This document shows positions 1,960 through 63,699 of a stretch of 64,000 nt of DNA, one piece after another; position 1 is the stretch's first letter, and each line of letters starts with the position of its first letter. A model generated the notes under the pieces. The model was given only the letters and a program-made list of their open reading frames with translations. It made no database searches and was not told the origin of the DNA. Source of the DNA: Heterodontus francisci (lineage: Eukaryota); NCBI RefSeq assembly GCF_036365525.1, contig NW_027142279.1:620001-684000 (forward strand), in the 5' to 3' direction. Made by a program: the position numbers and the translations under genes.

Positions 1960-2295
1960 ACAGGGTAGATGCAGGTAAGATGTTTCCCTTGGTTGGGGAG
2001 TCTACAACCAAGGTGCACAATTTCAAAATAAGGGGGAAGCCACTTGGGACTGAGATGAGGAGAAATTTCTTTACTCAGAGGGTTGTGAATCTTTGGAATT
2101 CTCTATCCCAGAGGGCTGTGGAAGCTCAGTCATTGAGTATGTTTAAAGCAGAGATTAACAGATTTCTAAATACCAATGACATAAAGGGATATGAGGATAG
2201 TCTGGAGAAAAGGCATTGATGTGGATGATCAGCCATGATAGTATTGAATGGCAGAGCAGGCTCAATGGGCTGAATGGCCTAATCCTGCTCCCTGT
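1960..2295 (+). mobile_element. CR1 LINE 3' end fragment
   Basis: ORF 1980..2219 RRNFFTQRVVNLWNSL (CR1 ORF2 C-terminus) followed by the 3' UTR gggctgaatggcct. Confidence 0.85.
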
Positions 2296-2604
2296 CTCAC
2301 TGCAGTTACTGTTCCCTCTCACCATCTTAAATCCTTTAAAAAATTAAACACCTCCATTAGATTCCCCTGTCAATATTCTCATGTCGGGACTGCAAGCCTT
2401 GTCTATGCAACATTTCTTCATAATTTAACAGACTGGATGCTGGTGAAGTTAATGCATGGTTTCGGTTCTGGGAGCTGTGTCACTTTATTGCTGCTGGCTG
2501 AGCTTCTGAATTATAAATAGACAAGCTTGGAAATAGTTAACAGATCAGACAGCCTCTGTGGGGAGTGAAAAGGAGTTAACATCATCAGCGAGAGAGGGAC
2601 CAAT

Positions 2605-3680
2605 AACTGCAGTGAGATAGAGACACCAGCAGATGGAGATGGTGAGAGGGGGAGTAACTGCAGTGAGACAGGGCCACCAGTAGATGGAGATGGTGGGAGG
2701 GGGACAGTAACTGCAGTGAGAGAGGGACACCAGCAGATGGAGATGGTGAGAGGGGGAGTAACTGCAGTGAGGCAGGGACACCAGCAGATGGAGATGGTGG
2801 GAGGGGGAGTAACTGCAGTGAGAGAGGGACACCAGCAGATGGAGATGGTGAGAGGGGGAGTAACTGCAGTGAGACAGGGTCACCAGCAGATGGAGGTGGT
2901 CAGAGGGGGGACAGTAACTGCAGTGAGAGAGGGACACCAGCAGATGAAGATGGTGGGAGGGGGACCGTAACTGCAGTGAGAGAGTGTCACCAGCAGATGG
3001 AGATGGTGAGAGGGGGCAGTGACTGCAGTGAGAGAGGGACACCAGCAGATGGAGATGGTGGGAGGGGGACAGTAACTGCAGTGAGAGAGTGTCACCAGCA
3101 GATGGAGATGGTGAGAGGGGGAGTAACTGCAGTGAGGCAGATGGAGATGGTCAGAGGGGTGACAGTAACTGCAGTGAGAGAGGGTCACCAGCAGATGGAG
3201 ATGGTGAGAGGGGGGCAGTGACTGCAGTGAGAGAGGGACACCAGCAGATGGAGATGGTCAGAGGGGGGCAGTGACTGCAGTGAGAGAGGGACACCAGCAG
3301 ATGGAGATGGTCAGAGGGGGGCAGTGACTGCAGTGAGAGAGGGAAACCAGCAGATGGAGATGGTGGGAGGGGGACAGGAACTGCAGTGAGAGAGTGTCAC
3401 CAGCAGATGGGGATGGTGAGTGGGGGAGTAACTGCAGTGAGGCAGATGGAGATGGTCAGAGGGGTGACAGCAACTGCAGTGAGAGAGGGTCACCAGCAGA
3501 TGGAGATGGTGAGAGGGGGGCAGTGACTGCATTGAGAGAGGGACACCAGCAGATGGAGATGGTCAGAGGGGGGCAGTGACTGCAGTGAGAGAGGGACACC
3601 AGCAGATGGGGATGGTGGGAGGGGGACAGTAACTGCAGTGAGACAGGGTCACCAGCAGATGGAGATGGTGAGAGGGGGAG
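2605..3680. repeat. Minisatellite, ~51-54-bp unit (aactgcagtgagagagggacaccagcagatggagatggtgagagggggagt), ~19-21 copies
   Basis: Tandem repetition; each unit contains a CTCF-like CCAGCAGATGGAG. Confidence 0.95.
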
Positions 3681-3684
3681 TATG

Positions 3685-4175
3685 CCGTCCAGTTGTGGTC
3701 ACCACACTTTAGGAAGGATGAGTGTCCTTGACAGGCTGCAGAGGAGATTTACCAGAATGGTTCCAGGGATGTTACATGGTTAGATTGGAGAATATGGGGT
3801 GGTTTTCCTTTGAGCAAAGGCGATTGAGGGGAGATCGGATAGGAGATGTACACGATTGTGACAGTGTTAGATAAAGTAGACAGAGTAAACCTGTTCCCAT
3901 TAGTGGATGGTGCAAGGACTATTGGTCACAGATTGATGATTCTGGACAATAGATACTGGGGTATTTGAGGAAGAACCTCTATACACAGTGAGTGGTAACA
4001 ACAGGGAATTCACTGCCTACCAGGGTGGTGGAAGTGGAGACAATGAATGATTTCAAAAGGAAATTGAATGGACACTTGAAGGGGATAATCTTGCTAGACC
4101 GCAGGGATAGAGAGGTGGAATGGAATTGACTAGATTGCATGGACTCGATGGGCCGAATGGCCTCCTTCTGTACCA
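3685..4175 (+). mobile_element. Degenerate CR1 LINE 3' fragment
   Basis: cagaggagatttaccagaatggttccagg and the gggccgaatggcctcct tail match CR1 3' ends elsewhere in the window. Confidence 0.8.
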
Positions 4176-7636: not shown

Positions 7637-7964
7637 AGTTTTTGCCGTGTTTCCTTGCATTCTAGTTGCACTGTGTGTATCCTAGTGAGCCCCGCAGTAG
7701 TAAGTGCTGTTGTCTTGGAGCCAGGAGCTTTTCAAGGACAGAGGGAAAGTGTTGGCCTGAGTCTCGTGCTGGGTTTCAATCCTTTTCCTGTAGTTAGATG
7801 CAGAAAGTACACTCTATCTGATCCATTCCAGGCAGTCACCAATCTGCAAGTACCAGTCCAAACAACACTCAGTCATGTTGCCCTGCCCAATGCTTCTGTG
7901 GATCATGGGTTCCTCCACGGGAACCAGGGCGTTGACCGCTGGGGACTGGAGAACCATCTAACAT
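7637..7964 (-). pseudogene. TRBV: TCR V pseudogene (family A, copy 1) with intact 23-RSS
   Basis: VLQSPAVNALVP...DWYLQIGDCLEWIR*...QDNSTYYCGAH*; first Cys lost and in-frame stops; RSS CACAGTG(7675..7669)-23-GCAAAAACT(7645..7637). Confidence 0.85.
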
Positions 7965-8669
7965 CTAACAAGATTCTTCACACAGGATGGCACATCAATG
8001 GGGAGAGAACGATACAGGGTTACAGGGAGGGACAGAGGCAAAGGCAGAAGAGAGGGAATAAGAAGGAGACAAACTATTCTTCTCCAGTCACGCTGCTACA
8101 TTCATACTTATATTTGCTCCGCAGGTTAAGCCCAATTATAAATCAGATTTATTACATTGATAAAACTATAAAAGCACCAAAGTCGGAAGGATGAACACAA
8201 ACCAGCTCAGTCTGTATCTGAGAAAAAAGAAAATTGGTAATGTTTAATGATGATACTCTGTCAGAATAATCCTAACTGCTGTTCACATCAAGGAACAGTA
8301 AATTATTTCAATTTGGTAGACGAGGAGATTATGTATAGCAATGCATAAAGTAACTATTACAAACATTAATTTCATCAACAATGGGACCAAATGGGGATAG
8401 TGGTGTTTCCTGTCTGAAAGCTGGAAAGCAGGAATATGGAAAGCAGATCTCAAACTACTTTGAGATTCATTTCAGAGGAGGAGGCTCGTTATAAGCAGTG
8501 TGATCAAACCGCCCCTGCTGCTGTGGAAACTGCAGATAGGTCAAATAACCAGTGTCACTGGCGTTGTATTCCTTGCAGAGCACCCTCTGACCACATCATA
8601 CCAACAAAACCTTAGAGGGGAACAGAGCCGGACAGGGAGAGGCCATCCCGGGGAACCCCACATAGGGAG

Positions 8670-42839: not shown

Positions 42840-43812
42840 GAGGGCAGTACTGAGGGAGTGCTGCACTGTCGTAGGGTCAGTACTGAGAGAGTGCTGTACT
42901 GTCAGAGGGTCAATACTGAGGGAGTGCTGCACTGTCAGAGGGTCTGTACTGAGGGAGTGCTGCACTGTTGGAAGGTCAGTACTGAGGGAGCGCTTCACTC
43001 ACAGAGGGTCAGTACTGAGGGAGTGCTGCACTGTTAGAGGGTCAGGACTGAGGGTGTGCGGCACTGTCGGAGGGTCAGTACTGAGTGAGTGCTGCACTGT
43101 GACAGGGCCAGTACTGAGGGAGTGCTGCACTGACAGAGGGTCAGTACTGAGTGAGTGCTGCACTGTCAGAGGGGAAAACTGAGGGAGTGCTGCACTGTCG
43201 GAGGGTCAGTACTGAGTGAGTGCTGCACTGTCAGAGGGGCTAACTGAGGGAGTGCAGCACTCTGCGAGGGTCAGAACTGAGGGAGTGCTGCACTGTCAGA
43301 GGGACAAACTGAGGGAGTGCTGCACTGTTAGAGGGTCAGTACTGAGGGAGTGCTGCACTGTCAGTGGATCAGTACTGAGGGAGTGCTGCACTGTGAGAGG
43401 AGCAGTACTGAGTGAGTGCTGCACTGTCAAGGGTCAGTACTGAGTGAGTGCTGTACTGTCAGAGGGTCAGTACTGAGGGAGTGCTGCACTGTCAGAGGGT
43501 CAGTACTGAGGGAGTGCTGCACAGTTATTGGGGCAGTACTGAGTGAGTGCTGCACTGTCAGAGGGTCAGTACTGAGGGAGTGCTGCCCTGTCAGAGGAGC
43601 AGTACTGAGTTAGTGCTGCACTGTCAGAGGGTCAGTACTGAGTGAGTGCTGTACTGTCAGAGGGTCAGTACTGAGGGAGTGCTGCACTGTGAGAGGAGCA
43701 GTACTGAGTGAGTGCTGCACTGTCAAGGGTCAGTACCGAGGGAGTGCTGCCCTGTCAGAGGAGCAGTCCTGAGTGAGTGCTGCACTGTCAGAGGGTCAGT
43801 ACTGAGGGAGTC
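42840..43812. repeat. 33-bp minisatellite (gagggtcagtactgagggagtgctgcactgtca); shorter array at 48283-48460
   Basis: Tandem repetition. Confidence 0.95.
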
Positions 43813-44996: not shown

Positions 44997-45492
44997 ATGT
45001 ATCAGTTACTGTGTCTGAGAATCCTGTTTCATTGTATGTGAGTGTGAAATGCAAACAATTATTGTTAATAACCTTCCTCTCCTCTCTCTGTCTCCCTTTC
45101 ATTCCCAGAAGTTCCCTGTTTACTGATATCCTCCTCTCTCCATCTCTCTCCCAGATGTGAACTCACAGACTATCCACCAGATTCCTGCCGCTGTCTCCAG
45201 ATTACCCGGGAAAGGAGTGGAACTGAGGTGCACTCTGGAGGGGAGCAGCAGTATCATCTCCATGTACTGGTACAGACAAGAGCCGGGGAAGGAGCCGCTG
45301 CTGATGTTTTACTCCAGTATTGCTAGCTATGTGGATCCAGAGGGGACGGTGGGCGGTTTCACTGTGGAGAGACCGACTGACTCCCAGTTCAACCTGGAGA
45401 CCTCCAGCCTGCAGGAGAATCACTCGGCCGTGTATCTCTGAGCCTGGAGTCTTCACACTGACTCAGAGAGATGGAGAAGTTCAAGAAAAACC
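44997..45492 (+). pseudogene. TRBV: TRBV30-like V pseudogene (second Cys codon mutated to TGA)
   Basis: Leader 44997..45033, V exon from 45155, ...HSAVYL*AWS; RSS CACACTG(45454)-23-AGAAAAACC. Confidence 0.92.
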
Positions 45493-45805: not shown

Positions 45806-46130
45806 NNNNNNNNNNNNNNNNNNNNNNNNNNNNNNNNNNNNNNNNNNNNNNNNNNNNNNNNNNNNNNNNNNNNNNNNNNNNNNNNNNNNNNNNNNNNNNN
45901 NNNNNNNNNNNNNNNNNNNNNNNNNNNNNNNNNNNNNNNNNNNNNNNNNNNNNNNNNNNNNNNNNNNNNNNNNNNNNNNNNNNNNNNNNNNNNNNNNNNN
46001 NNNNNNNNNNNNNNNNNNNNNNNNNNNNNNNNNNNNNNNNNNNNNNNNNNNNNNNNNNNNNNNNNNNNNNNNNNNNNNNNNNNNNNNNNNNNNNNNNNNN
46101 NNNNNNNNNNNNNNNNNNNNNNNNNNNNNN
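45806..46130. other. Assembly gap (325 N)
   Basis: Run of n. Confidence 1.
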
Positions 46131-48098
46131 CATACATACATACGGTGTGGTTTGATGTCACAGTGTTTTCTTTCTCCAAAGGGACAGCAGAGTGCGCTGT
46201 AGGACCATGATAAACATCAGAGTCTGGAACACACTTGAACAGTAACCTGGGAACACAAGGAGAACATTCATCACCTCGGAAACACTCCGCCCTTCAATGA
46301 GATCATGACTGATCAATAACTTCTTGTCGGTCCCTCTCTGCATTCCCCCCACTCTCTCTCTCTCTCTCCCTCCATCCCTCTCTCTCACTCCAGTTACCAA
46401 GCTGGTGTAAAATGAGAGAATGACAATTAACAACCCTGCCTTTTACAGGGGCAGTGACTGTCGCTCTCGCTCGCTATTTCTCTACCTCTCTGACTTTCCC
46501 TCTATCTCTCTATTTCTCTACCTTTCCATATATCTATCTGTCTACCTGACTGTCTCTTTATCTAGCTCGTTATTTCTCTACCTATATGACTTTCCCTCTA
46601 TCTCTCTATTTCTCGACCTCTCTCCATATCTATCTGTCTATCTGACTGTCTCTCTATGCAGCTCGCTATTTCTCTACCTATCTGACTTTCCCTCTATCTA
46701 CCTCTCTCTCTATATCTACCTGTCTACCTGACTGTCTCTCTATCCAGCTCGCTATTTCACAACCTATCTGACTTTCCCTCGATCCCTCTATTTCTCTACC
46801 TCTCTCTATATCTATCTGTCTACCTGACTGTCTCTCGATCTATCTATCTCTCTACCTGGTTATCTTTCTCTCTGTCTCTCTATCTATCTAACTATATCTT
46901 TAGGTGATTACAGTTTGTATGAATTAATTAAACATATTGCAGTAATGTAATGAATGCCCATCTTTTCATAGATTTTCTATATATTAACCAGTTGATGATC
47001 TGGTTTGTCATCAATTATCTATCAAAATCCTCTATGATCTTCAATATCTAGAATCACATCTTCCATTAACCTTCTCTGCTCTAAGGGGATAAACCCCCAG
47101 CTTCTACAGTCTCTCCACAGTAACTGAAGTCCCTCATCCCTGGTTCCAGTCTGGTTCATCTCCCTCTAACCTTCACTACACAGAGGTGAACAACTCCCCA
47201 ATGTACAGGAACTAACCCAGATCAGAACCCTTAGCCATCTGAGCACTGTTTCACACTGTAGAAAGGCGAGACCGCTCTCCAGATACCTTCATCTCTGGGA
47301 CACCTGCCTCCTGACAGCGAGTTCAGAAGCTGCTGAAAACTCTTTACCCACTTTCATCTCAGACTCGAGTCACATTTGATGTGTTCTTCAAAGAAACTAG
47401 CAGTTCAGACCAGTGAACTATTTCACACTTTAACTCCGATTCAGCAACGAGGTACGGGAGCAGAGCAGTTATGTTACTGGACTAGTAATCCAGAGGCCTG
47501 GACTAATGATCCCCAGATATGAGTTCAGTTCTCAACAGGGGCAGAAATGGAATTTAAATTTAATTAAGTAAATAAATAAAATCTGTAATGGAAAGTAAGA
47601 GCAATTCTGAACATGGAGTGTCGTAAAAACCCTACGTATTCATTGATAACCTTCAGGGAAGGAAATCTGCCATTCTTACCCGGTCTGGCCTATATGTGAC
47701 TGCAGACCCACAGCATTGTAGTTGACTGTTAACTGCCCTCTGATATGGCCCAGCAGGTATTCCCGAAGATGGTTCACCACCACCTTCTCAGGGGCAATAA
47801 GGGATGTACACACTCTCTGGGTATGGAGGGTTGTTTCCCTGAATTCTACTCTATCAAATCCCTTTCTGAAATGTGAACACCTCTATTCAATCTCCCCCTA
47901 TCCTCCTGTGTTGTATCATTCTACAACATTGCTTTGCAAAGTAATGGGGAGGAGCAGAGTGTCGCAGTAAGTGACTGCCAATCACAATGACAACCGGATG
48001 CTGGGTATTTAATTGGATACAATATAGAAACCGACTGCAAGTGTGTTGTTGAAAACTCCACACGTTCACACATTGAGTTAGTATCGAATGAAGAAATC

Positions 48099-48898
48099 AT
48101 GTTGCATGAAGTTCTCTGTCTAACCTTGATGGCTGCACTCTTCCCACGTAAGTCAAAGTCAGAAACTGTGCACAATAATGTATTGTCATGTCAGCGGTGA
48201 TTCTGTCCAAAACACTCCTGTGTCAGAGTCTCACTACAGAACATTGAGCTCAAAGTCAAGGCTGACAACCCAGGTGTCAGGACCGAGGGAGTGCTGCACT
48301 ATCGCAGAGGCTGTACTGAGAGAGTGCTGCACTGTCGCAGAGTCAGCACAGAGGGAGTGCTGCACTGTCACAGAGGCACTATTGAGGAAGTGCTGCACTG
48401 TCGACGAAGCGGCACTGAGGGAGTGCTGCACTGTCGCAGAGACAGTACTGAGGGAGTACCTACATTGGTTGCAAAGCCCTTTCTGATGTCCTGAGGTCCT
48501 GAACGGCGCTATATTAATGTAAGCCCTTTATTTCTTGCAATGCAGCTCCTGCTCCAATCCATTATTGACTGAAATAATAATCTAATCGATGTTCCATTCC
48601 ACAGGAATACTCTCCTCCTATGTGGAACAGTCGCCCTCTATCCTATCGCTTTCCGCAGGAGAGTCGACAACACTCAGATGCACGCTGACCAATACTGACT
48701 ATTCCTTTCTATACTGGTACAGACAACAAGCAGACAGGGCACTGGAAGCTCTGTTCTATTCTGCTACAGAAGGGTCTGTTACCAATTACACGTCCGAGTC
48801 ATTTAAGGCAGTCAGAGCCAGCAATACACTGTTTACTTTGGCACTGAGAGACGCCGCTCCATCTCACACCGCTGTCTATTTCTGCACTTGTAGTATCG
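48099..48898 (+). CDS. TRBV: Intact TCR beta V segment of a distinct family (leader 48099..48147, V exon 48605..48898)
   Basis: Leader MLHEVLCLTLMAALFP with C|GTAAGT; ILSSYVEQSPSILSLSAGESTTLRCTL...LYWYRQ...LFYS...HTAVYFCTCS. Confidence 0.9.
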
Positions 48899-48937
48899 CA
48901 CAGTGTTTGAGAAAGCGGATCCGCAGCTGCAAAAACC
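48899..48937 (+). other. 23-RSS (CACAGTG-23-GCAAAAACC)
   Basis: Directly 3' of the V exon. Confidence 0.93.
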
Positions 48938-48956
48938 TGCAGTGGATGAATGGGAG

Positions 48957-50615
48957 TTCAGTGCTCATCTTCCCCCGGCAGGGGGCAGCAGTTGATTAAA
49001 TCTCAATGCTCATCTTCCCCCGGCAGGGGGCAGCAGTAGATTGAATCTCAGTGCTCATCTTCCCCCGGCAGGGGGCAGCAGTAGATTGAATCTCAGTGCT
49101 CATCTTCCCCCAGCAGGGGGCAGCAGTAGATTGAATCTCAGTGCTCATCTTCCCCCGGCAGGGGGCAGCAGTAGATTAAATCTCAGTGCTCATCTCCCCC
49201 CGGCAGGGGGCAGCAGTAGATTAAATCTCAGTGCTCATCTCCCCCCGGCAGGGGGCAGCAGTAGATTGAATCTCAGTGCTCATCTCCCCCCGGCAGGGGG
49301 CAGCAGTAGATTGAATCTCAGTGCTCATCTTCCCCCGGCAGGGGGCAGCAGTAGATTAAATCTCAATGCTCATCTTCCCCCGGCAGGGGGCAGCAGTAGA
49401 TTAAATCTCATTGCTCATCTCCCCCCGGCAGGGGGCAGCAGTAGATTAAATCTCAGTGGTCATCTCCCCCCGGCAGGAGGCAGCAGTAGATTGAATCTCA
49501 ATGCTCATCTTCCCCCGGCAGGGGGCAGCAGTAGATTGAATCTCAGTGCTCATCTTCCCCCGGCAGGGGGCAGCAGTAGATTGAATCTCAGTGCTCATCT
49601 TCCCCCGGCAGGGGGCAGCAGTAGATTGAATCTCAGTGCTCATCTTCCCCCGGCAGGGGGCAGCAGTAGATTAAATCTCAATGCTCATCTTCCCCCGGCA
49701 GGGGGCAGCAGTAGATTGAATCTCAGTGCTCATCTTCCCCCGGCAGGGGGCAGCAGTAGATTGAATCTCTGCGCTCATCTTCCCCCGGCAGGGGGCAGCA
49801 GTAGATTGAATCTCAGCGCTCATCTTCCCCCGGCAGGGGGCAGCAGTAGATTGAATCTCAGTGCTCATCTTCCCCCAGCAGGGGGCAGCAGTAGATTGAA
49901 TCTCAGTGCTCATCTTCCCCCGGCAGGGGGCAGCAGTAGATTAAATCTCAATGCTCATCTTCCCCCGGCAGGGGGCAGCAGTAGATTAAATCTCAGTGCT
50001 CATCTCCCCCCGGCAGGGGGCAGCAGTAGATTAAATCTCAGTGCTCATCTCCCCCCGGCAGGGGGCAGCAGTAGATTGAATCTCAATGCTCATCTTCCCC
50101 CGGCAGGGGGCAGCAGTAGATTGAATCTCAGTGCTCATCTTCCCCCGGCAGGGGGCAGCAGTAGATTGAATCTCAGTGCTCATCTTCCCCCGGCAGGGGG
50201 CAGCAGTAGATTGAATCTCAGTGCTCATCTTCCCCCGGCAGGGGGCAGCAGTAGATTGAATCTCAGTGCTCATCTTCCCCCGGCAGGGGGCAGCAGTAGA
50301 TTAAATCTCAATGCTCATCTTCCCCCGGCAGGGGGCAGCAGTAGATTGAATCTCAGTGCTCATCTTCCCCCGGCAGGGGGCAGCAGTAGATTGAATCTCT
50401 GCGCTCATCTTCCCCCGGCAGGGGGCAGCAGTAGATTGAATCTCTGAGCTCATCTTCCCCCGGCAGGGGGCAGCAGTAGATTAAATCTCAATGCTCATCT
50501 TCCCCCGGCAGTGGGCAGCAGTAGATTGAATCTCTGCGCTCATCTTCCCCCGGCAGGGGGCAGCAGTAGATTAAATCTCAGTGCTCATCTTCCCCCGGCA
50601 GTGGGCAGCAGTAGA
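48957..50615 (+). repeat. 45-bp tandem repeat, 37 copies; 35 carry a CTCF-consensus motif (CCGGCAGGGGGCAG or a close variant)
   Basis: Motif position runs from 48975 to 50595 with an exact 45-bp period; units nearly identical. The repeat is certain; CTCF function is inferred. Confidence 0.95.
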
Positions 50616-51552
50616 TTTGATCCTCCCTGATGGTGATGGGCACAGTAATGAGCACAGACCAAGCTGTAGAATAGATCAGCAGCCCAGTGTGACCCAGATA
50701 TTGTTGCACCTACTTCCCTCGGGCCAATGTTGCAGAAAACGTTTGCCAGGAGTCCCACCTGACCATTTGTGAATCAACATCTGGCTGTTTTTCTTAATTC
50801 GTTCATGGAATGTGGGCCTCGCTGGCTCGGCCAGCACTTATTGCCCATCCCTGATTGCCCTTGAACTGACTGACTTGCTTGGCCATTCCAGAGGGCATTT
50901 AACGGTCAACCACATTGTGTGGATCCGGAGTCACATGTAGACCAGACCAGGTGAAGGCGGTAGATTTCCTTCCCTAACATCAGTGAACGAGATGGATTGT
51001 TGCAACAATGGTCACCATTAGACGAGATTCTTTTGAAAATATAGATTTATTAATGACATTGAAATGTCTTTATTTGTGTTGGTGGGATTCACCCCCCCCC
51101 CCCCCTCCCCCGCCCCACGTCGCTATAACTCTAGCCGAGGCTGTGGATTAAGAATCTAGTCAAGTCAGCCACACACTAATACATCCCCTACAGGAGCAGA
51201 TCATTTGGAATCCAGATGTCTATAATTGGAAATCTACATGTGGCTAATGTGGGAATGCCGATGAGGTTCATAACGTACAATTGGAGATTTCTAATCAGCA
51301 AATTAGAAACTGAACAACAGACACCCTTGTTGGGGATGTTAACAACACTTACTCCAGTCACTCAACCATCATAAGCAACCACGTCCATTCTGATTGGTTG
51401 GGTGCTGGAAGGGGCGTGTCCAACACTGCATTACTTCCTCATGCCCTTCATGTTTTACTCAATGACTTGGAAAGAGCGGATTGGTTAGTCACAGAACTGA
51501 TTTCCTCTGTTCCACTTCCTTTGCTGTTTGAGAGGGCAGTGTCAAGTGGGAG

Positions 51553-51935
51553 ATGTATCTGTTCCTGGCTCTGATAATCCTGGTTCAAGGATACAAAGAT
51601 TATCCTTCAGAACCTTCCTGTCTTCTCCCTGTCTCCCTTCCATTCCCAGAAGTTCCCTGTTTACTGATCTCCTCCTCTCTCCATCTCTCTCCCAGATGTG
51701 AACTCACAGACTATCCACCAGACTCCCGCCGCAGTCTCCAGGTTTCCCGAGAAATGAGTGGAACTGAGGTGCACCGTGGAGGGGAGCAGCAGTCACCTCT
51801 CCATGTACTGGTACAGACAAGAGCCGGGGAAGGAGCCGCTGTTGATGTTTTACTCCAGTACTGTTAACTATGTGGATCCAGAGGGGACGGTGGGCGGTTT
51901 CACCGCCGAGAGACCGACTGACTCCCAGTTCAACC
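51553..51935 (+). pseudogene. TRBV: TRBV30-like V pseudogene (donor lost, FR1 stop, 3' end and RSS deleted)
   Basis: Leader MYLFLALIILVQ followed by GA instead of GT; V exon from 51696 with PEK*VELRC; breaks at QFNL into downstream flank sequence. Confidence 0.9.
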
Positions 51936-51959
51936 TTTGCTCCAGAAAGGAGAAGACTG

Positions 51960-52088
51960 NNNNNNNNNNNNNNNNNNNNNNNNNNNNNNNNNNNNNNNNN
52001 NNNNNNNNNNNNNNNNNNNNNNNNNNNNNNNNNNNNNNNNNNNNNNNNNNNNNNNNNNNNNNNNNNNNNNNNNNNNNNNNNNNNNNNN
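51960..52088. other. Assembly gap (129 N)
   Basis: Run of n. Confidence 1.
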
Positions 52089-53219
52089 TCACTGTGTTTC
52101 CTTTCTCCAAAGGGACAGCAGAGTGCACTGTAGGACCATGATAAACATCAGAGTCTGCAACACACTTTAACAATGACCTGGGAACACAAGGAGACCATTC
52201 ATCACCTCGGAAAAACTCCGACCTTCAATGAGATCAGGAATGATCAATAACTTCCTGTCGCTCCCTCTCTCCATCCCTCTTTCTCCATCCCTCTCTCCAT
52301 CCCTCTCTCCATCCCCCTCTTTCCCCCTCTCGCCATCCCTCTTTCTCCATCCCCACTCTCCCTCTCTCTCCCTCCCTCTCTCTCCCACTAGCTACAAAGC
52401 CGGTGTAAAATGAGAGAATGCCAATTAACATCCCTGTCTTTTACATGGGCAGTGACTGCCTCTCTATCTAGCTCGCTAAATCTCTACCTATCTGACTTTC
52501 CCTCTATCTCTGTATTTCTCTACCTCTCTATATATCTATCTGTGTACCTGACTGTCTATCTATCTATCTCTCTACCTGGTTATCTATCGCTCTTTCTCGC
52601 TATCTATCTAACTCTATCTTTAGCTGATTACAGTTTGTATGAACTGATTAAACATACTGTAATAATGAAATGAATGACCATCTTTTCATAGATTAACTAT
52701 ATATTGACCATATATGATGTGGTTTGTCATCAATTATCTATCAAAATCCTCTATGATCTTCAATGTCTGTATCACATCTACCATTAACCTTCTGTGCTGC
52801 AAGTAGAGAAACCCCCACATTCTCCAGTCTCTCCACAGTAACTGAAGTCCCTCATCCCTGGCACCAGTCTGGTTAATATCCCTCTCACCTTCACTGCACA
52901 GAGGGGAACAACCCCCAATGCACAGGGACTCAATACATCCGGTGATAAAACACAGAGACAGAGAGGGTGAATCAGGGAGACATAGAGAGGAAAAACTCAG
53001 CGTAAATGAACGGGACAGAGGGAGACAGAGAGAGAACGACACACACACACACACACACAGATACAGAGTGAGAAAGAGATTGAAAGAGTTGGAGACATAA
53101 AGCTCGATACATGCAGAGAGAGAGAGAGAGAGATAGAAACAAAGTGTAAGAAAGAGAGAGGAAGGCGGATTGAGATAGATAGAGAGAGAGACGTTGTCAA
53201 CCTACTCCACTCTAACTTG

Positions 53220-61736: not shown

Positions 61737-61923
61737 CAGATTGGCAGCCAATACAATTCTGATTTGTTGAACTGGGTGAATGGGCGTCTCCATCATTGTA
61801 TCAGTTCCTAATGCTCTTCATGTTCCTCCCAATGATTTGTAAAGAGTGGATTTGGACCTTCACAAGACTCTAAGCTCCTGCTCTCACTCCTGTGTCTATT
61901 AAGAGAACAAGTTGAAGTGAAAG

Positions 61924-62379
61924 ATGTATCAGTTACTGTGTCTGATAATCCTGTTTCATTGTAAGTGAGCATGAAATACAAAGATTATCGTTAATAACCT
62001 TCCTCTCCTCTCCCTGTCTCCCTTTCATTCCCAGATGCTCCCTGTTTACTGATCTCCTCCTCTCTCCATCTCTCTCCCAGATGTGAACTCACAGACTATC
62101 CACCAGACTCCCGCCGCTGTCTCCAGATTTCCCGGGAAAGGAGTGGAACTGAGGTGCACTGTGGAGGGGAGCAGCAGTACCCTCTACATGTTTTGGTACA
62201 GACAAGAGCCGGGGAAGGAGCCGCTGTTGATGTTTTACTCCAGTATTGCTAACTATGTGGATCCAGAGGGGACGGTGGATGGTTTCACCGCCGAGAGACC
62301 GAATGAGTACGAGTTCAACCTGGAGTCCTCCAGCCTGTGGGAGAATCACTCGGCCGTGTATTTCTGTGCCTGGAGTCTT
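61924..62379 (+). CDS. TRBV: Intact TRBV30-like V segment (leader 61924..61960, V exon 62081..62379)
   Basis: SQTIHQTPAAVSRFPGKGVELRCTVEGSSSTLYMFWYRQ...HSAVYFCAWSL; RSS CACAGTG(62380)-23-AGAAAAACC(62410..62418). Confidence 0.93.
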
Positions 62380-63699
62380 CACAGTGACTCAGAGCGATGG
62401 AGCAGTTCAAGAAAAACCCCAAAGGCAGCAGGAAATACCTGTTTCAGATAAAACCAGGCGGTGCTGCGTCCTGTTGGGTGTTTTTATCATTGGGAACATG
62501 TTTTTCACAAGAAGACAGGGCGGATTTAAATAGAAATTGAGAGGTTAAATATAGAAACAAAGGGGAATTGTGAAATAGACTTGACAGGAATGATATCAGA
62601 GCACAGAGGTTAAAGTTATCAAGAAAGTTTGAACATCGGGGGATTATTACTCCAGAAAGGAGAAGACAAGAGTAAACTTTCAGCGGTCTTAGAGAGATTA
62701 TTAAAGATTTTAATATCTGAAATGAAGATCAGATAAAAACAGACAGACAGGCAGTCAGATAGACAGATAGATAGATCCGGTGTGGTTTTATTTCACTGCG
62801 TTTTCTTTCTCCAAAGGGACAGCAGAGTGCGCTGTAGGACCCTGATAAACATCAGAGTCTGGAACACAGTTTAACAGTGACCTGGGAACACAAGGAGAAC
62901 ATTCATCACCTCGAAAACACTCCGCCCTTCAATGAGTTCGTGACTTATCAATAACTTTCTGTCGCTCCCTCTCTCCATCCCTCTCTCTCCATCCCTCTCT
63001 CTCCATCCCTCTCTCTCCATCTCTCTCGCTCCCTCTCTCTCTCTATTCCCCACTCTACCACTAGCTACAAAGCCGCCGTAAAATGGTCGAATGCGAATTA
63101 ACATTCCTGTCTTTTACTGGGGCAGTGACTGTCTCTCTATGTAGCTCGCTATTTCTCTACCTGTCTGACTTTCCCTCCAACTCTCTATTTCTCTACCTCT
63201 CTCGATATCAATCTATCTCTCTCCCTGGTGATCTATCTCTCTGTCTCTCTATCTATCCAACTCTATCTTTGGGTGATTACACTTTGTATGAACTAATTAA
63301 ACATGCTGCACTAATATAATGAATGACCATCTTTTCCGGGATTTTCTATACATTGACCAGTAGATGATGTGGTTTGTCATCAATTATCTATCAAAATCTT
63401 TTATCATCTTCAATATCTGTATCACATCTACCATTAACCTTCTCTGCTCTCAGGAGAGAAACCCCCAGCTTCTCCAGTCTCTCCACAGTAATTGAGCTCC
63501 CTCATCCCTGGTACCAGTCTTGTTAATCTCCCTCTAACCTTCACTACACAGAGTCGAACAACCCCCCAATGAACAGGAACTAACTCAGCTCGGAACCCTT
63601 AACCATCTGAGCGCTGTTTCACACTGTTCAAAGGCGAGATCCCTCTCCAGATAACTTCATCTCTGGGACACCTGCCTCCTGACAGCGAGTTCAGAAGAG

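What the first reader, a model, noticed from the sequence alone, without database searches (positions are those of the whole stretch)
48957..50615. 37-unit tandem array of CTCF-consensus sites immediately 3' of a V-gene RSS: candidate minisatellite-built loop-extrusion super-anchor
Seen: a 45-bp unit repeated 37 times, first core 38 bp after the nonamer of the intact V at 48605. The core CCGGCAGGGGGCAG (CCAGCAGGGGGCAG in a few units) fits the CTCF consensus CCASYAGRKGGCRS. TCAGT/TCAAT lies 12 bp upstream of the core, where the zinc-finger 9-11 upstream motif (TGCART-like) is expected. All units share one orientation, pointing 3' of the V; two distal units carry a core G>T. Known: in mouse Igh, CTCF sites just 3' of proximal VH RSSs stall cohesin-driven RAG scanning and boost VH usage, and clustered sites form the 3' anchor. 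Inference: an ordinary RSS-adjacent CTCF site was amplified into a VNTR. This could make the V dominant in the repertoire, shield more distal Vs, and tune the repertoire by copy number or by methylation of the core CpG.
Basis: partly seen in the sequence, partly recalled or inferred. Interest (0 to 1): 0.9.

Follow-up and report, generated by a model that had tools for sequence, protein, structure and literature searches.

The report
CTCF-motif minisatellite beside a V gene
A shark T-cell-receptor V gene that is intact and expressed is followed, right after its recombination signal, by 37 head-to-tail copies of a 45-bp unit that each carry a good same-direction match to the CTCF binding motif. 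This is a plausible but untested built-in chromatin-loop barrier next to a V(D)J recombination site.

Summary
TRF finds a 45-bp x 36.9 array at 48958-50617 (96% matches, no indels). Its first core starts 38 bp after the nonamer of a 23-RSS, and the V is spliced and expressed.

All 37 units carry a CTCF-like core on the V strand:
- 2 units: perfect match.
- 3 units: weakened.

One of 2000 shuffles of the unit scores as well. The claimed upstream (ZF9-11) motif is no better than chance.

The unit is not a dispersed satellite: it has no other copy in the window and few contigs cover it, against 127 or more for neighbouring repeats. Contigs from two other coded species bridge V end, RSS and 2-5 units at about 90% identity, so amplification predates those splits. 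No other V in the window has an RSS-adjacent motif.

Other first-stage notes on other DNA of this genome report similar arrays of 1-18 copies beside paralogous Vs (unchecked).

CTCF binding, loop anchoring and V-usage effects remain untested.

Verdict: a real V-linked CTCF-motif VNTR, a new variant of known kinds (mouse VH CBEs, DXPas34). The functional reading is about even odds.

The parts
48099..48147 (+). Leader exon of the V gene (ATG at 48099, 49 nt, ends in phase 1, GT donor)
   Evidence: The sequence is. The RNA-like run X5 shows a GT..AG joint 48147->48605.
48605..48898 (+). V exon, open frame ending ...YFCTCSI. TCR-beta-like V domain of a different family from the TRBV30-like neighbours
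   Evidence: Translation is. The best single-domain PDB matches are TCR beta V domains. One homologue was found, a Scyliorhinus torazame Ig-like protein at 60% identity. X5 depth on this exon is far above the flanks.
48899..48937 (+). 23-RSS: heptamer CACAGTG, 23-bp spacer, nonamer GCAAAAACC
48940..48957 (+). Degenerate partial unit in register with the array (GCAGTGGA-TGAAT against unit GCAGTAGATTGAAT). The repeat therefore effectively starts 2 bp after the nonamer
   Evidence: Local alignment. This is weak evidence: 117 of 2000 shuffles score as well.
48958..50617 (+). 45-bp x 36.9 tandem array. Each unit carries a CTCF-like core at unit positions 18-31, all on the + strand
48975..48988 (+). 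First CTCF-like core (CCGGCAGGGGGCAG), 38 bp after the nonamer
49110..49123 (+). Unit 4 core CCAGCAGGGGGCAG: perfect IUPAC consensus, 19.8 bits
49875..49888 (+). Unit 21 core: perfect IUPAC consensus, 19.8 bits
49470..49483 (+). Unit 12 core weakened (GGAGGC, 13.1 bits)
50505..50518 (+). Unit 35 core weakened by G>T (10.4 bits)
50595..50608 (+). Unit 37 core weakened by G>T (10.4 bits)
47330..51386 (+). Module of about 4 kb (promoter, leader, V, RSS, array) that interrupts the otherwise repeated TRBV30-like cassette
   Evidence: Self-BLAST. 46900-47329 matches 52620-52930 and 63269-63697, and 51387-51936 matches the V30-like genes. The paralogous interval is only about 300 bp.

Best explanation
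This is a V-linked minisatellite. A 45-bp unit holding one genuine CTCF-type core motif has been amplified to 37 same-direction copies directly behind the 23-RSS of a functional TCR-beta-type V gene.

Shown: the structure, the motif quality, the orientation on the V strand, V expression, low genomic copy number, and presence of the same V-RSS-repeat junction in two other species.

Inferred: CTCF (in germ cells possibly CTCFL too) occupies some of the units. With its N-terminal side facing 3' of the V, it would stall cohesin arriving from that side. The adjacent RSS would then be held at a loop base, as at mouse proximal VH CBEs. Copy number, and methylation of the CpG at core positions 2-3, would set how strong the barrier is.
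For: - MOTIF. 34 of 37 units match CCASYAGRKGGCRS with up to 1 mismatch, against 0.82 such hits expected in the whole window. The PWM score is 16.3 bits for 32 units (p about 1.5e-6) and 19.8 bits for 2 units. Only 1 of 2000 shuffles of the unit reaches 16.3. The CCG start is that of the older published consensus CCGCGNGGNGGCAG (PMC10094706).
- MOTIF APPLIES TO CARTILAGINOUS FISH. MA0139.1 at threshold 8 marks oriented TAD-boundary sites in skate (PMC10115646). Sharks have CTCF, with the cohesin-binding YDF motif, and CTCFL (PMC7471279).
- POSITION. The first core is 38 bp after the nonamer. None of the other 8 RSS-bearing Vs in the window has a hit of 8 bits or more within 120 bp.
- ACTIVE V. 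Leader-V splice joints and high RNA depth on the V exon.
- AGE AND LINKAGE. A contig of organism B spans 48850-49195 and one of organism C spans 48856-49038, both at about 90% identity and without gaps. About 10 variant contigs cover the junction in organism A.
- NOT DISPERSED. No other copy in the window. Contig count and summed depth are of the order of the V exon, 100-1000 times below the flanking dispersed repeats (depth is from contigs, so only rough).
- WITHIN-ARRAY VARIATION. Minor variants fill 5/703 cells inside the 19-bp PWM window against 40/962 outside.
- PRECEDENT. PMC7930373, PMC5859386, and PMC12885311 (insulation rises with the number of sites).
Against: - No binding, methylation or contact data of any kind exist here.
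- The preferred A at core position 3 is G in 35 of 37 units. That creates a CpG at the position where, from my own knowledge (Hashimoto et al. 2017), methylation blocks CTCF. Repeats in vertebrate genomes are usually methylated. The array's CpG o/e is 0.29, the same as background, so there is no sign of a hypomethylated island.
- The upstream ZF9-11 motif that marks most strong insulators is absent.
- The window is full of minisatellites (at least 12 families), and another, TE-derived one also carries CTCF-like motifs. CTCF-like cores may therefore be a common by-product of G-rich minisatellites in this genome.
- Variable positions are as frequent inside the core (3/14) as outside (7/31). Homogenisation alone could explain the low variant counts.
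- The position of D-J-C relative to this V is unknown.
Confidence: 0.45

Rival explanations
1. Neutral minisatellite. The flank of the RSS happened to contain, or once held, a single CTCF-like site and expanded by unequal exchange or replication slippage. The array is methylated and nucleosomal in lymphocytes, is not bound, and copy number has no effect on recombination.
For: - At least 12 minisatellite families lie in 64 kb.
- The unit string shows a recent internal duplication of about 13-17 units, typical of unequal exchange.
- CpG o/e equals background.
- There is no upstream motif.
- Core position 3 is suboptimal.
- The number of variable positions in the core equals that outside.
- By my rough estimate (not computed), about 7% of windows like this one would have some array start within 40 bp of an RSS.
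Against: - The motif quality is reached by 1 of 2000 shuffles.
- The V-RSS-array junction is kept in three species at about 90% identity.
- The array is unique to this V family among 9 RSS-bearing Vs in the window.
- The core CpG is retained in 35 of 37 units.
Confidence: 0.35
2. The repeat is recognised by something other than CTCF, or acts through DNA behaviour: a meiotic recombination or gene-conversion hotspot that drives duplication of the V cassette, another zinc-finger protein, or a hairpin-prone pause or termination site for germline V transcription.
For: - The GGGGGCAG/CAGCAG content recalls G-rich hypervariable minisatellite cores (my own knowledge).
- CCCCC-GGCA-GGGGG can form a small hairpin in every unit.
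- RNA depth falls from thousands on the V exon to 0-200 in the array in X5.
- The V-plus-array module looks transposed or duplicated into the V30-like cassette.
Against: - Folding is not better than shuffles (z about -1.6 on both strands).
- The RNA drop at the RSS is what rearranged transcripts give anyway.
- No alternative motif was identified.
- The CTCF match is specific and spans 14-19 bp.
Confidence: 0.12
3. The array exists, but its length (37 units) is an assembly artefact of a collapsed or expanded repeat.
Against: - There are 16 distinct unit variants in an ordered, non-periodic string with no indels. That is what a long-read assembly of a real array looks like.
- Contigs from three organisms confirm at least 2-5 units at the junction.
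Confidence: 0.05

Closest known systems
CTCF-binding elements just 3' of proximal VH RSSs in mouse Igh (VH81X-CBE type)
   Same: A CTCF motif within tens of bp downstream of the RSS of a functional V, on the V strand. In mouse such sites raise use of that V and lower use of the next upstream one, and pseudogenes lack them (PMC7930373). V-region sites of Igh and Tcrb all point toward D-J-C (PMC5859386).
   Different: The mouse has one site per V, whereas here there are 37 in tandem. This is a shark TCR-beta-type V, not Igh. Only one V family in the window has it. Binding and effect are untested.
DXPas34 minisatellite at mouse Tsix
   Same: A minisatellite with short monomers (30-34 bp). Each monomer contains a CpG-bearing CTCF site, and site number varies between species (PMC3149622).
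   Different: DXPas34 lies at a non-coding RNA promoter and acts in X-inactivation choice. It is CpG-rich, whereas this array has background CpG content. There is no link to V(D)J recombination.
DXZ4 / Dxz4 macrosatellite
   Same: A tandem array of same-orientation CTCF sites that acts as an orientation-dependent architectural anchor. Binding depends on methylation state (PMC3491370; bioRxiv 10.1101/165340).
   Different: DXZ4 has kb-scale monomers on a megabase-scale array, is X-linked, and is not beside a gene segment.
Clustered CBE anchors of antigen-receptor loci (Igh 3'CBEs, IGCR1)
   Same: Several same-direction CTCF sites acting together as a strong extrusion barrier (PMC10293834). Tandem sites add up in insulation (PMC7087399).
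   Different: Those sites are unique sequences spread over kilobases, not a 45-bp VNTR, and they sit at locus ends or the V-D border rather than on a V's RSS.
Transposon-borne CTCF site expansions (e.g. rodent SINE B2; my own knowledge)
   Same: Repeats as the vehicle that multiplies CTCF motifs. The second array in this window (2590-3679) appears to derive from a transposon tail.
   Different: The 45-bp unit has no detectable transposon relative in the window and is low-copy. Multiplication is local and tandem, not dispersed.

Membership tests
CTCF-binding element (CBE) | Match to the 14-19 bp core motif read by ZF3-7 | tested here: met
   34/37 units have up to 1 mismatch to CCASYAGRKGGCRS, against 0.82 expected in the window. 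1 of 2000 shuffles reaches this.
CTCF-binding element (CBE) | Upstream 10-bp motif for ZF9-11 at a 2-7 bp linker. This is optional: present in 13-15% of sites but in most strong insulators (PMC12885311) | tested here: not met
   The best fit is 5/10 at any linker from 0 to 11.
CTCF-binding element (CBE) | Occupancy by CTCF in vivo or in vitro | not testable with these tools
   No ChIP, CUT&Tag or EMSA data are reachable.
CTCF-binding element (CBE) | Unmethylated core CpG where the site is used | tested here: inconclusive
   The CpG at core positions 2-3 is kept in 35/37 units, and 2 units show CpG>CpA. But the array's CpG o/e of 0.29 equals background. There are no methylation reads.
RSS-associated V-gene CBE (mouse proximal VH type) | Lies just 3' of the RSS of a functional, used V | tested here: met
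   The core is 38 bp after the nonamer. The V is intact with leader, spliced and expressed.
RSS-associated V-gene CBE (mouse proximal VH type) | Motif points toward the D-J-C recombination centre | tested here: inconclusive
   All 37 motifs are on the V coding strand, pointing 3' of the V. No D, J, C or 12-RSS is in the window, and the window holds V blocks on both strands.
RSS-associated V-gene CBE (mouse proximal VH type) | Raises use of its V and impedes scanning to upstream Vs | not testable with these tools
   This needs repertoire and 3C-type data.
Minisatellite / VNTR | Head-to-tail units of 10-100 bp with internal variant structure | tested here: met
   45 bp x 36.9 at 96% identity. 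16 variants and an internal block duplication.
Minisatellite / VNTR | Copy number varies between alleles or individuals | not tested
Other readers' notes of 1-18 copies at paralogues are unchecked.
Dispersed genome-wide satellite | Many copies at unrelated sites | tested here: not met
   0 copies elsewhere in the 64 kb. About 10 contigs cover the first unit, against 127 or more at the neighbouring SINE-like repeat, and summed depth is 100-1000 times lower (rough, because it comes from contigs).

The most novel reading that the evidence does not exclude
Coupling of a CTCF barrier to a V-segment RSS is ancient and already present in cartilaginous fish. In this shark lineage it is built as a variable-number tandem repeat. 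One V family then carries a heritable, rapidly adjustable 'dial' of 1 to 37 sites, also switchable by methylation, that sets how strongly cohesin-driven RAG scanning stops at that V and how far it reaches beyond.
Probability: 0.3. Interest if true: 0.85.

Novelty: new variant of a known kind. Interest (0 to 1): 0.62.

Why it matters
How loop extrusion came to shape antigen-receptor repertoires is known almost only from mouse Igh, Igk and Tcr loci. A CTCF-motif array welded to the RSS of a used V in sharks, kept in several species, would show that the V-CBE logic goes back to early jawed vertebrates.

It would also offer a natural dosage series (1 to 37 sites at paralogous Vs) for asking how barrier strength scales with site number. 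That question is otherwise addressed only by engineered insertions.

If the array proves unbound, it is a useful caution that strong CTCF motifs arise in minisatellites without function.

Tried and rejected
The flank of the only protein homologue (S. torazame) could therefore not be read.
As the tool advised, only 47600-49320 was laid, so copy number and the 3' junction were not checked in reads.

SEARCHES THAT FOUND NOTHING.
- An exact-pattern scan of metagenome contigs for the unit gave 0 hits.
- The findings index by sequence and by relatives was blank.

READINGS CONSIDERED AND REJECTED.
- Coding repeat: one + strand frame is open for 483 codons and one - strand frame is partly open. About half of all frames of a 45-bp unit are open by chance, and RNA depth in the array is low.
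- Structured DNA or RNA: folding z is about -1.6 on either strand.
- Transposon origin of the 45-bp unit: no similarity to anything else in the window.
- CpG island: o/e is 0.29.
- Upstream ZF9-11 motif: at chance level.
- General RSS-adjacent CTCF motif on all Vs of the window: absent.

CAVEATS.
- The PWM is MA0139.1 as I recall it, not fetched from JASPAR. The IUPAC-consensus counts are the independent check.
- The N runs 45806-46130 and 51960-52088 were left untouched.

Full report
1. THE OBSERVATION.

Tandem Repeats Finder reports one clean array at 48958-50617: period 45, 36.9 copies, 96% matches and no indels. A 34-nt probe from the unit matches 37 times with up to 3 mismatches. All matches are on the + strand, all are inside the array, and none is expected by chance.

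Cutting the array in register gives 16 unit variants. The core reads CCGGCAGGGGGCAG in 32 units. Units 4 and 21 have CCAGCAG.

The unit string (ABCDEFGGEHIJBCCEBCKLDEHFGBCCCEBCKMNO) shows that a block of about 13-17 units was duplicated inside the array. That is the usual trace of unequal exchange. The 18 bp between the nonamer and the first full unit look like a decayed partial unit in register (weak, 117 of 2000 shuffles score as well). The repeat therefore effectively begins 2 bp after the RSS.

2. THE V GENE.

The heptamer CACAGTG is at 48899, followed by a 23-bp spacer and the nonamer GCAAAAACC, which ends at 48937. The V exon (48605-48898) is open and ends in YFCTCSI. Its best single-domain matches among solved structures are TCR beta V domains.

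The window holds eight more RSS-bearing Vs: five on the + strand and three on the - strand. All have 23-bp spacers, and most belong to a ...YFCAWSL family that another reader called TRBV30-like. The V at 48605 belongs to a different family. Its only database relative is a 60%-identical Ig-like protein of Scyliorhinus torazame.

In run X5 (same sample as the best DNA holders, RNA-like) the V exon is covered far above its flanks. Two GT..AG joints end exactly at 48605, one from 48147 and one from 48518. The joint from 48147 defines a 49-nt leader exon that starts with ATG at 48099 and ends in phase 1. So the V is intact, spliced and expressed. Coverage drops at the RSS, as expected if most transcripts are rearranged.

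3. IS THE CORE A CTCF MOTIF, BEYOND CHANCE?

The IUPAC consensus CCASYAGRKGGCRS occurs exactly only twice in 64 kb, in units 4 and 21, against 0.03 expected. With one mismatch there are 37 hits, 34 of them in the array, against 0.82 expected. The common unit therefore fits 13/14. The misfit is G instead of the preferred A at core position 3.

That CCG start is the one in the older published consensus CCGCGNGGNGGCAG (PMC10094706). It places a CpG at core positions 2-3.

- Common unit: 16.3 bits (p about 1.5e-6).
- CCAG variant: 19.8 bits.
- Three damaged units: 10.4-13.1 bits.

Only 1 of 2000 shuffles of the unit reaches 16.3 bits. For scale, the little-skate study used this same matrix at a threshold of 8 to find oriented CTCF motifs at TAD boundaries of a cartilaginous fish (PMC10115646). 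Sharks also have CTCF, with its cohesin-binding YDF motif, and CTCFL (PMC7471279).

The published upstream element is a 10-bp CTGCAGTTCC-like sequence separated from the core region by 2-7 bp (PMC12885311). The array fits it at best 5/10 at any spacing from 0 to 11, which is chance level.

4. IS IT A DISPERSED SATELLITE?

Within the window the unit has no other copy.

As the tool advised, I laid 47600-49320, which covers the promoter, V, RSS and the first 8 units. All runs were contigs, so depth is only a rough guide.

The contrast is still large. The SINE-like piece at 47658-47831 and the 33-bp repeat at 48296-48469 collect summed depths of 2e5 to 1.4e6, with 127 or more contigs at one position. 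The array bins collect 130-1800, with about 10 contigs at its first unit, which is of the same order as the V exon (465-1445). The array's own 37 copies can account for most of that. The unit is therefore a low-copy, V-linked repeat, and the refutation test is not met.

5. OTHER SPECIES AND PARALOGUES.

A 354-nt contig of organism B lies on 48850-49195 without gaps and with 32 differences. It bridges the V end, the RSS and about five units. A 183-nt contig of organism C lies on 48856-49038 with 18 differences and bridges into the second unit. So the junction and the 45-bp phase are shared by three coded species at about 90% identity.

The two that could be seen do not, so the amplification is older than these splits.

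In organism A's DNA run, about 10 contig variants cover the junction, and all differ from the window at 48943 and 48951. This points to paralogous or allelic copies.

That agrees with unchecked notes by other first-stage readers on other DNA of this genome:
- Arrays directly behind V RSSs (s1-872054, s1-872208).
- A five-copy array about 35 bp from the RSS of 'the single divergent V' (s1-871868).
- Copy numbers 17, 6, 3, 1 across four paralogous Vs (s1-872304).
- A 45-bp array at a V-to-D border 449 kb upstream on the same piece (s1-871883).

I could not read those sequences. They are leads, not support.

6. CONTEXT IN THE WINDOW.

None of the other eight Vs has any PWM hit of 8 bits or more within 120 bp after its nonamer. 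An RSS-adjacent motif is therefore a property of this V family, not of the locus.

Self-comparison shows that about 4 kb (47330-51386: promoter, V, RSS and array) interrupts the repeated V30-like cassette. The paralogous interval is about 300 bp. V and array therefore behave as one module.

Two other CTCF-like features turned up.
(a) A block of about 50 bp is conserved in five paralogous copies. Its core is GGGACAGCAGAGKGC (10.7-16.4 bits). It lies a few hundred bp 3' of some V30-like RSSs, and its strand follows the V strand.
(b) A second tandem array at 2590-3679 (51-53 bp units) has 18 units carrying exact CTGCAGT, then 9 nt, then CCAGCAG. That is the bipartite upstream-plus-core layout, although its core is weaker in the 3' half. 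It sits between transposon tails, and one inverted single unit lies at the end of such a tail. It is therefore probably transposon-derived.

Two of about 12 minisatellite families with CTCF-like cores is far more than shuffles predict. This cuts both ways. It may mean CTCF arrays are used in this locus, or that G-rich minisatellites of this genome drift toward such cores.

7. SIGNS OF CONSTRAINT.

Inside the 19-bp PWM window only 5 of 703 unit-cells carry a minor base, against 40 of 962 outside. The core variants each stayed in one or two units, mostly at the array's distal edge, while outside variants spread to 4-13 units.

This is suggestive only. The number of variable positions is the same in the core (3/14) as outside it (7/31), and cells are not independent in a homogenising array.

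The core CpG is kept in 35 of 37 units, and the two exceptions are CpG>CpA. However, the array's CpG o/e (0.29) is the same as the surroundings. Methylation state cannot be read from the sequence.

8. MECHANISM: WHAT IS SHOWN AND WHAT IS INFERRED.

Shown: a low-copy, V-linked, phylogenetically shared 45-bp VNTR made of strong, same-strand CTCF-type cores, abutting the RSS of an expressed V.

From established knowledge:
- In mouse Igh, a CBE just 3' of a proximal VH RSS raises that V's use and lowers the next one's. Repairing a dead CBE turns a pseudogene into the dominant V (PMC7930373).
- V-region sites of Igh and Tcrb all point toward D-J-C (PMC5859386).
- Several tandem sites insulate more strongly than one (PMC7087399, PMC12885311).
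- Minisatellite- and macrosatellite-built CTCF arrays exist: DXPas34 (PMC3149622) and DXZ4 (PMC3491370).

Inferred: some units are occupied by CTCF. A 45-bp period leaves room for about one protein per unit, given a footprint of about 33-40 bp for core, linker and upstream part. Cohesin coming from the 3' side would then stall there and hold the RSS at a loop base, with strength set by copy number and by methylation of the C at core position 2. The methylation effect is from my own knowledge of Hashimoto et al. 2017.

I put this at about 0.45. The main rival is a neutral, probably methylated minisatellite with no role, at about 0.35. Whether the motifs face the D-J-C cluster cannot be decided, because the window has no D, J or C and holds Vs on both strands.

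9. NOVELTY AND VERDICT.

Each ingredient is known: RSS-adjacent CBEs, and tandem-repeat CTCF arrays. What I did not find in the literature searches is their combination, a VNTR of CTCF motifs welded to an RSS, or any such feature in a cartilaginous fish. I class it as a new variant of a known kind. It is interesting mainly because it is directly testable and would push V-CBE coupling back to early jawed vertebrates.

Its sequence-level predictions mostly hold, one (the upstream motif) fails, one expectation (a single site in other sharks) is contradicted, and all functional claims remain open.

Noticed in passing
window 2590-3679 (+): Second tandem array (51-53 bp units, about 20 copies) with CTCF-like cores (CACCAGCAGATGGAGATG, 13-17.7 bits). 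In 18 units an exact CTGCAGT lies 9 nt upstream of CCAGCAG, which is the published bipartite upstream-plus-core spacing. It is on the same strand as the 45-bp array, 45 kb away.
   Followed up: partly
window 2262-2330 and 4140-4170: The second array lies between two tails of an abundant shark transposon (..GGGCYGAATGGCCT..). One inverted single copy of its unit sits right after the left tail (2298-2330). This suggests a transposon-tail origin of that CTCF-like minisatellite.
   Followed up: partly
window 46181, 52112, 56577, 62816 (+) and 9327 (-): A block of about 50 bp (..CTCCAAAGGGACAGCAGAGKGCG.TGTAGGACC..ATCAGA) is the best-conserved stretch among five paralogous V30-like cassette flanks. 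Its core is CTCF-like (10.7-16.4 bits) and its strand follows the V strand. It lies about 400-700 bp 3' of the RSSs at 45454 and 62380.
   Followed up: partly
window 48278-48457 and 42840-43811: A 33-bp unit (..CAGTACTGAGGGAGTGCTGCACTGTC..) sits inside the leader intron of the V. It also forms a 30-copy array 5 kb upstream. It is a massively dispersed repeat in all three organisms laid, with summed contig depth up to 1.4e6.
   Followed up: partly
window 51387-51959 and N run 51960-52088; also N run 45806-46130: A further TRBV30-like V (82% identical to 61756-62321) runs into the N gap, so its RSS is not readable.
   Followed up: no
window 47655-47758 and 50873-50975: Inverted copies (80% identical) of a SINE-like element flank the V-plus-array module. 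This is probably chance, given the element's abundance.
   Followed up: no
window 7676-7970 (-): A V of a third family (..YYCGAH) with a good heptamer but an in-frame stop in the V exon and a 2-mismatch nonamer. Likely a pseudogene.
   Followed up: no
window 48518->48605: A second GT..AG joint in the RNA-like run uses a donor at 48518 (86-nt intron) besides the leader donor at 48147. This may be an alternative or cryptic 5' exon of the V transcript.
   Followed up: no
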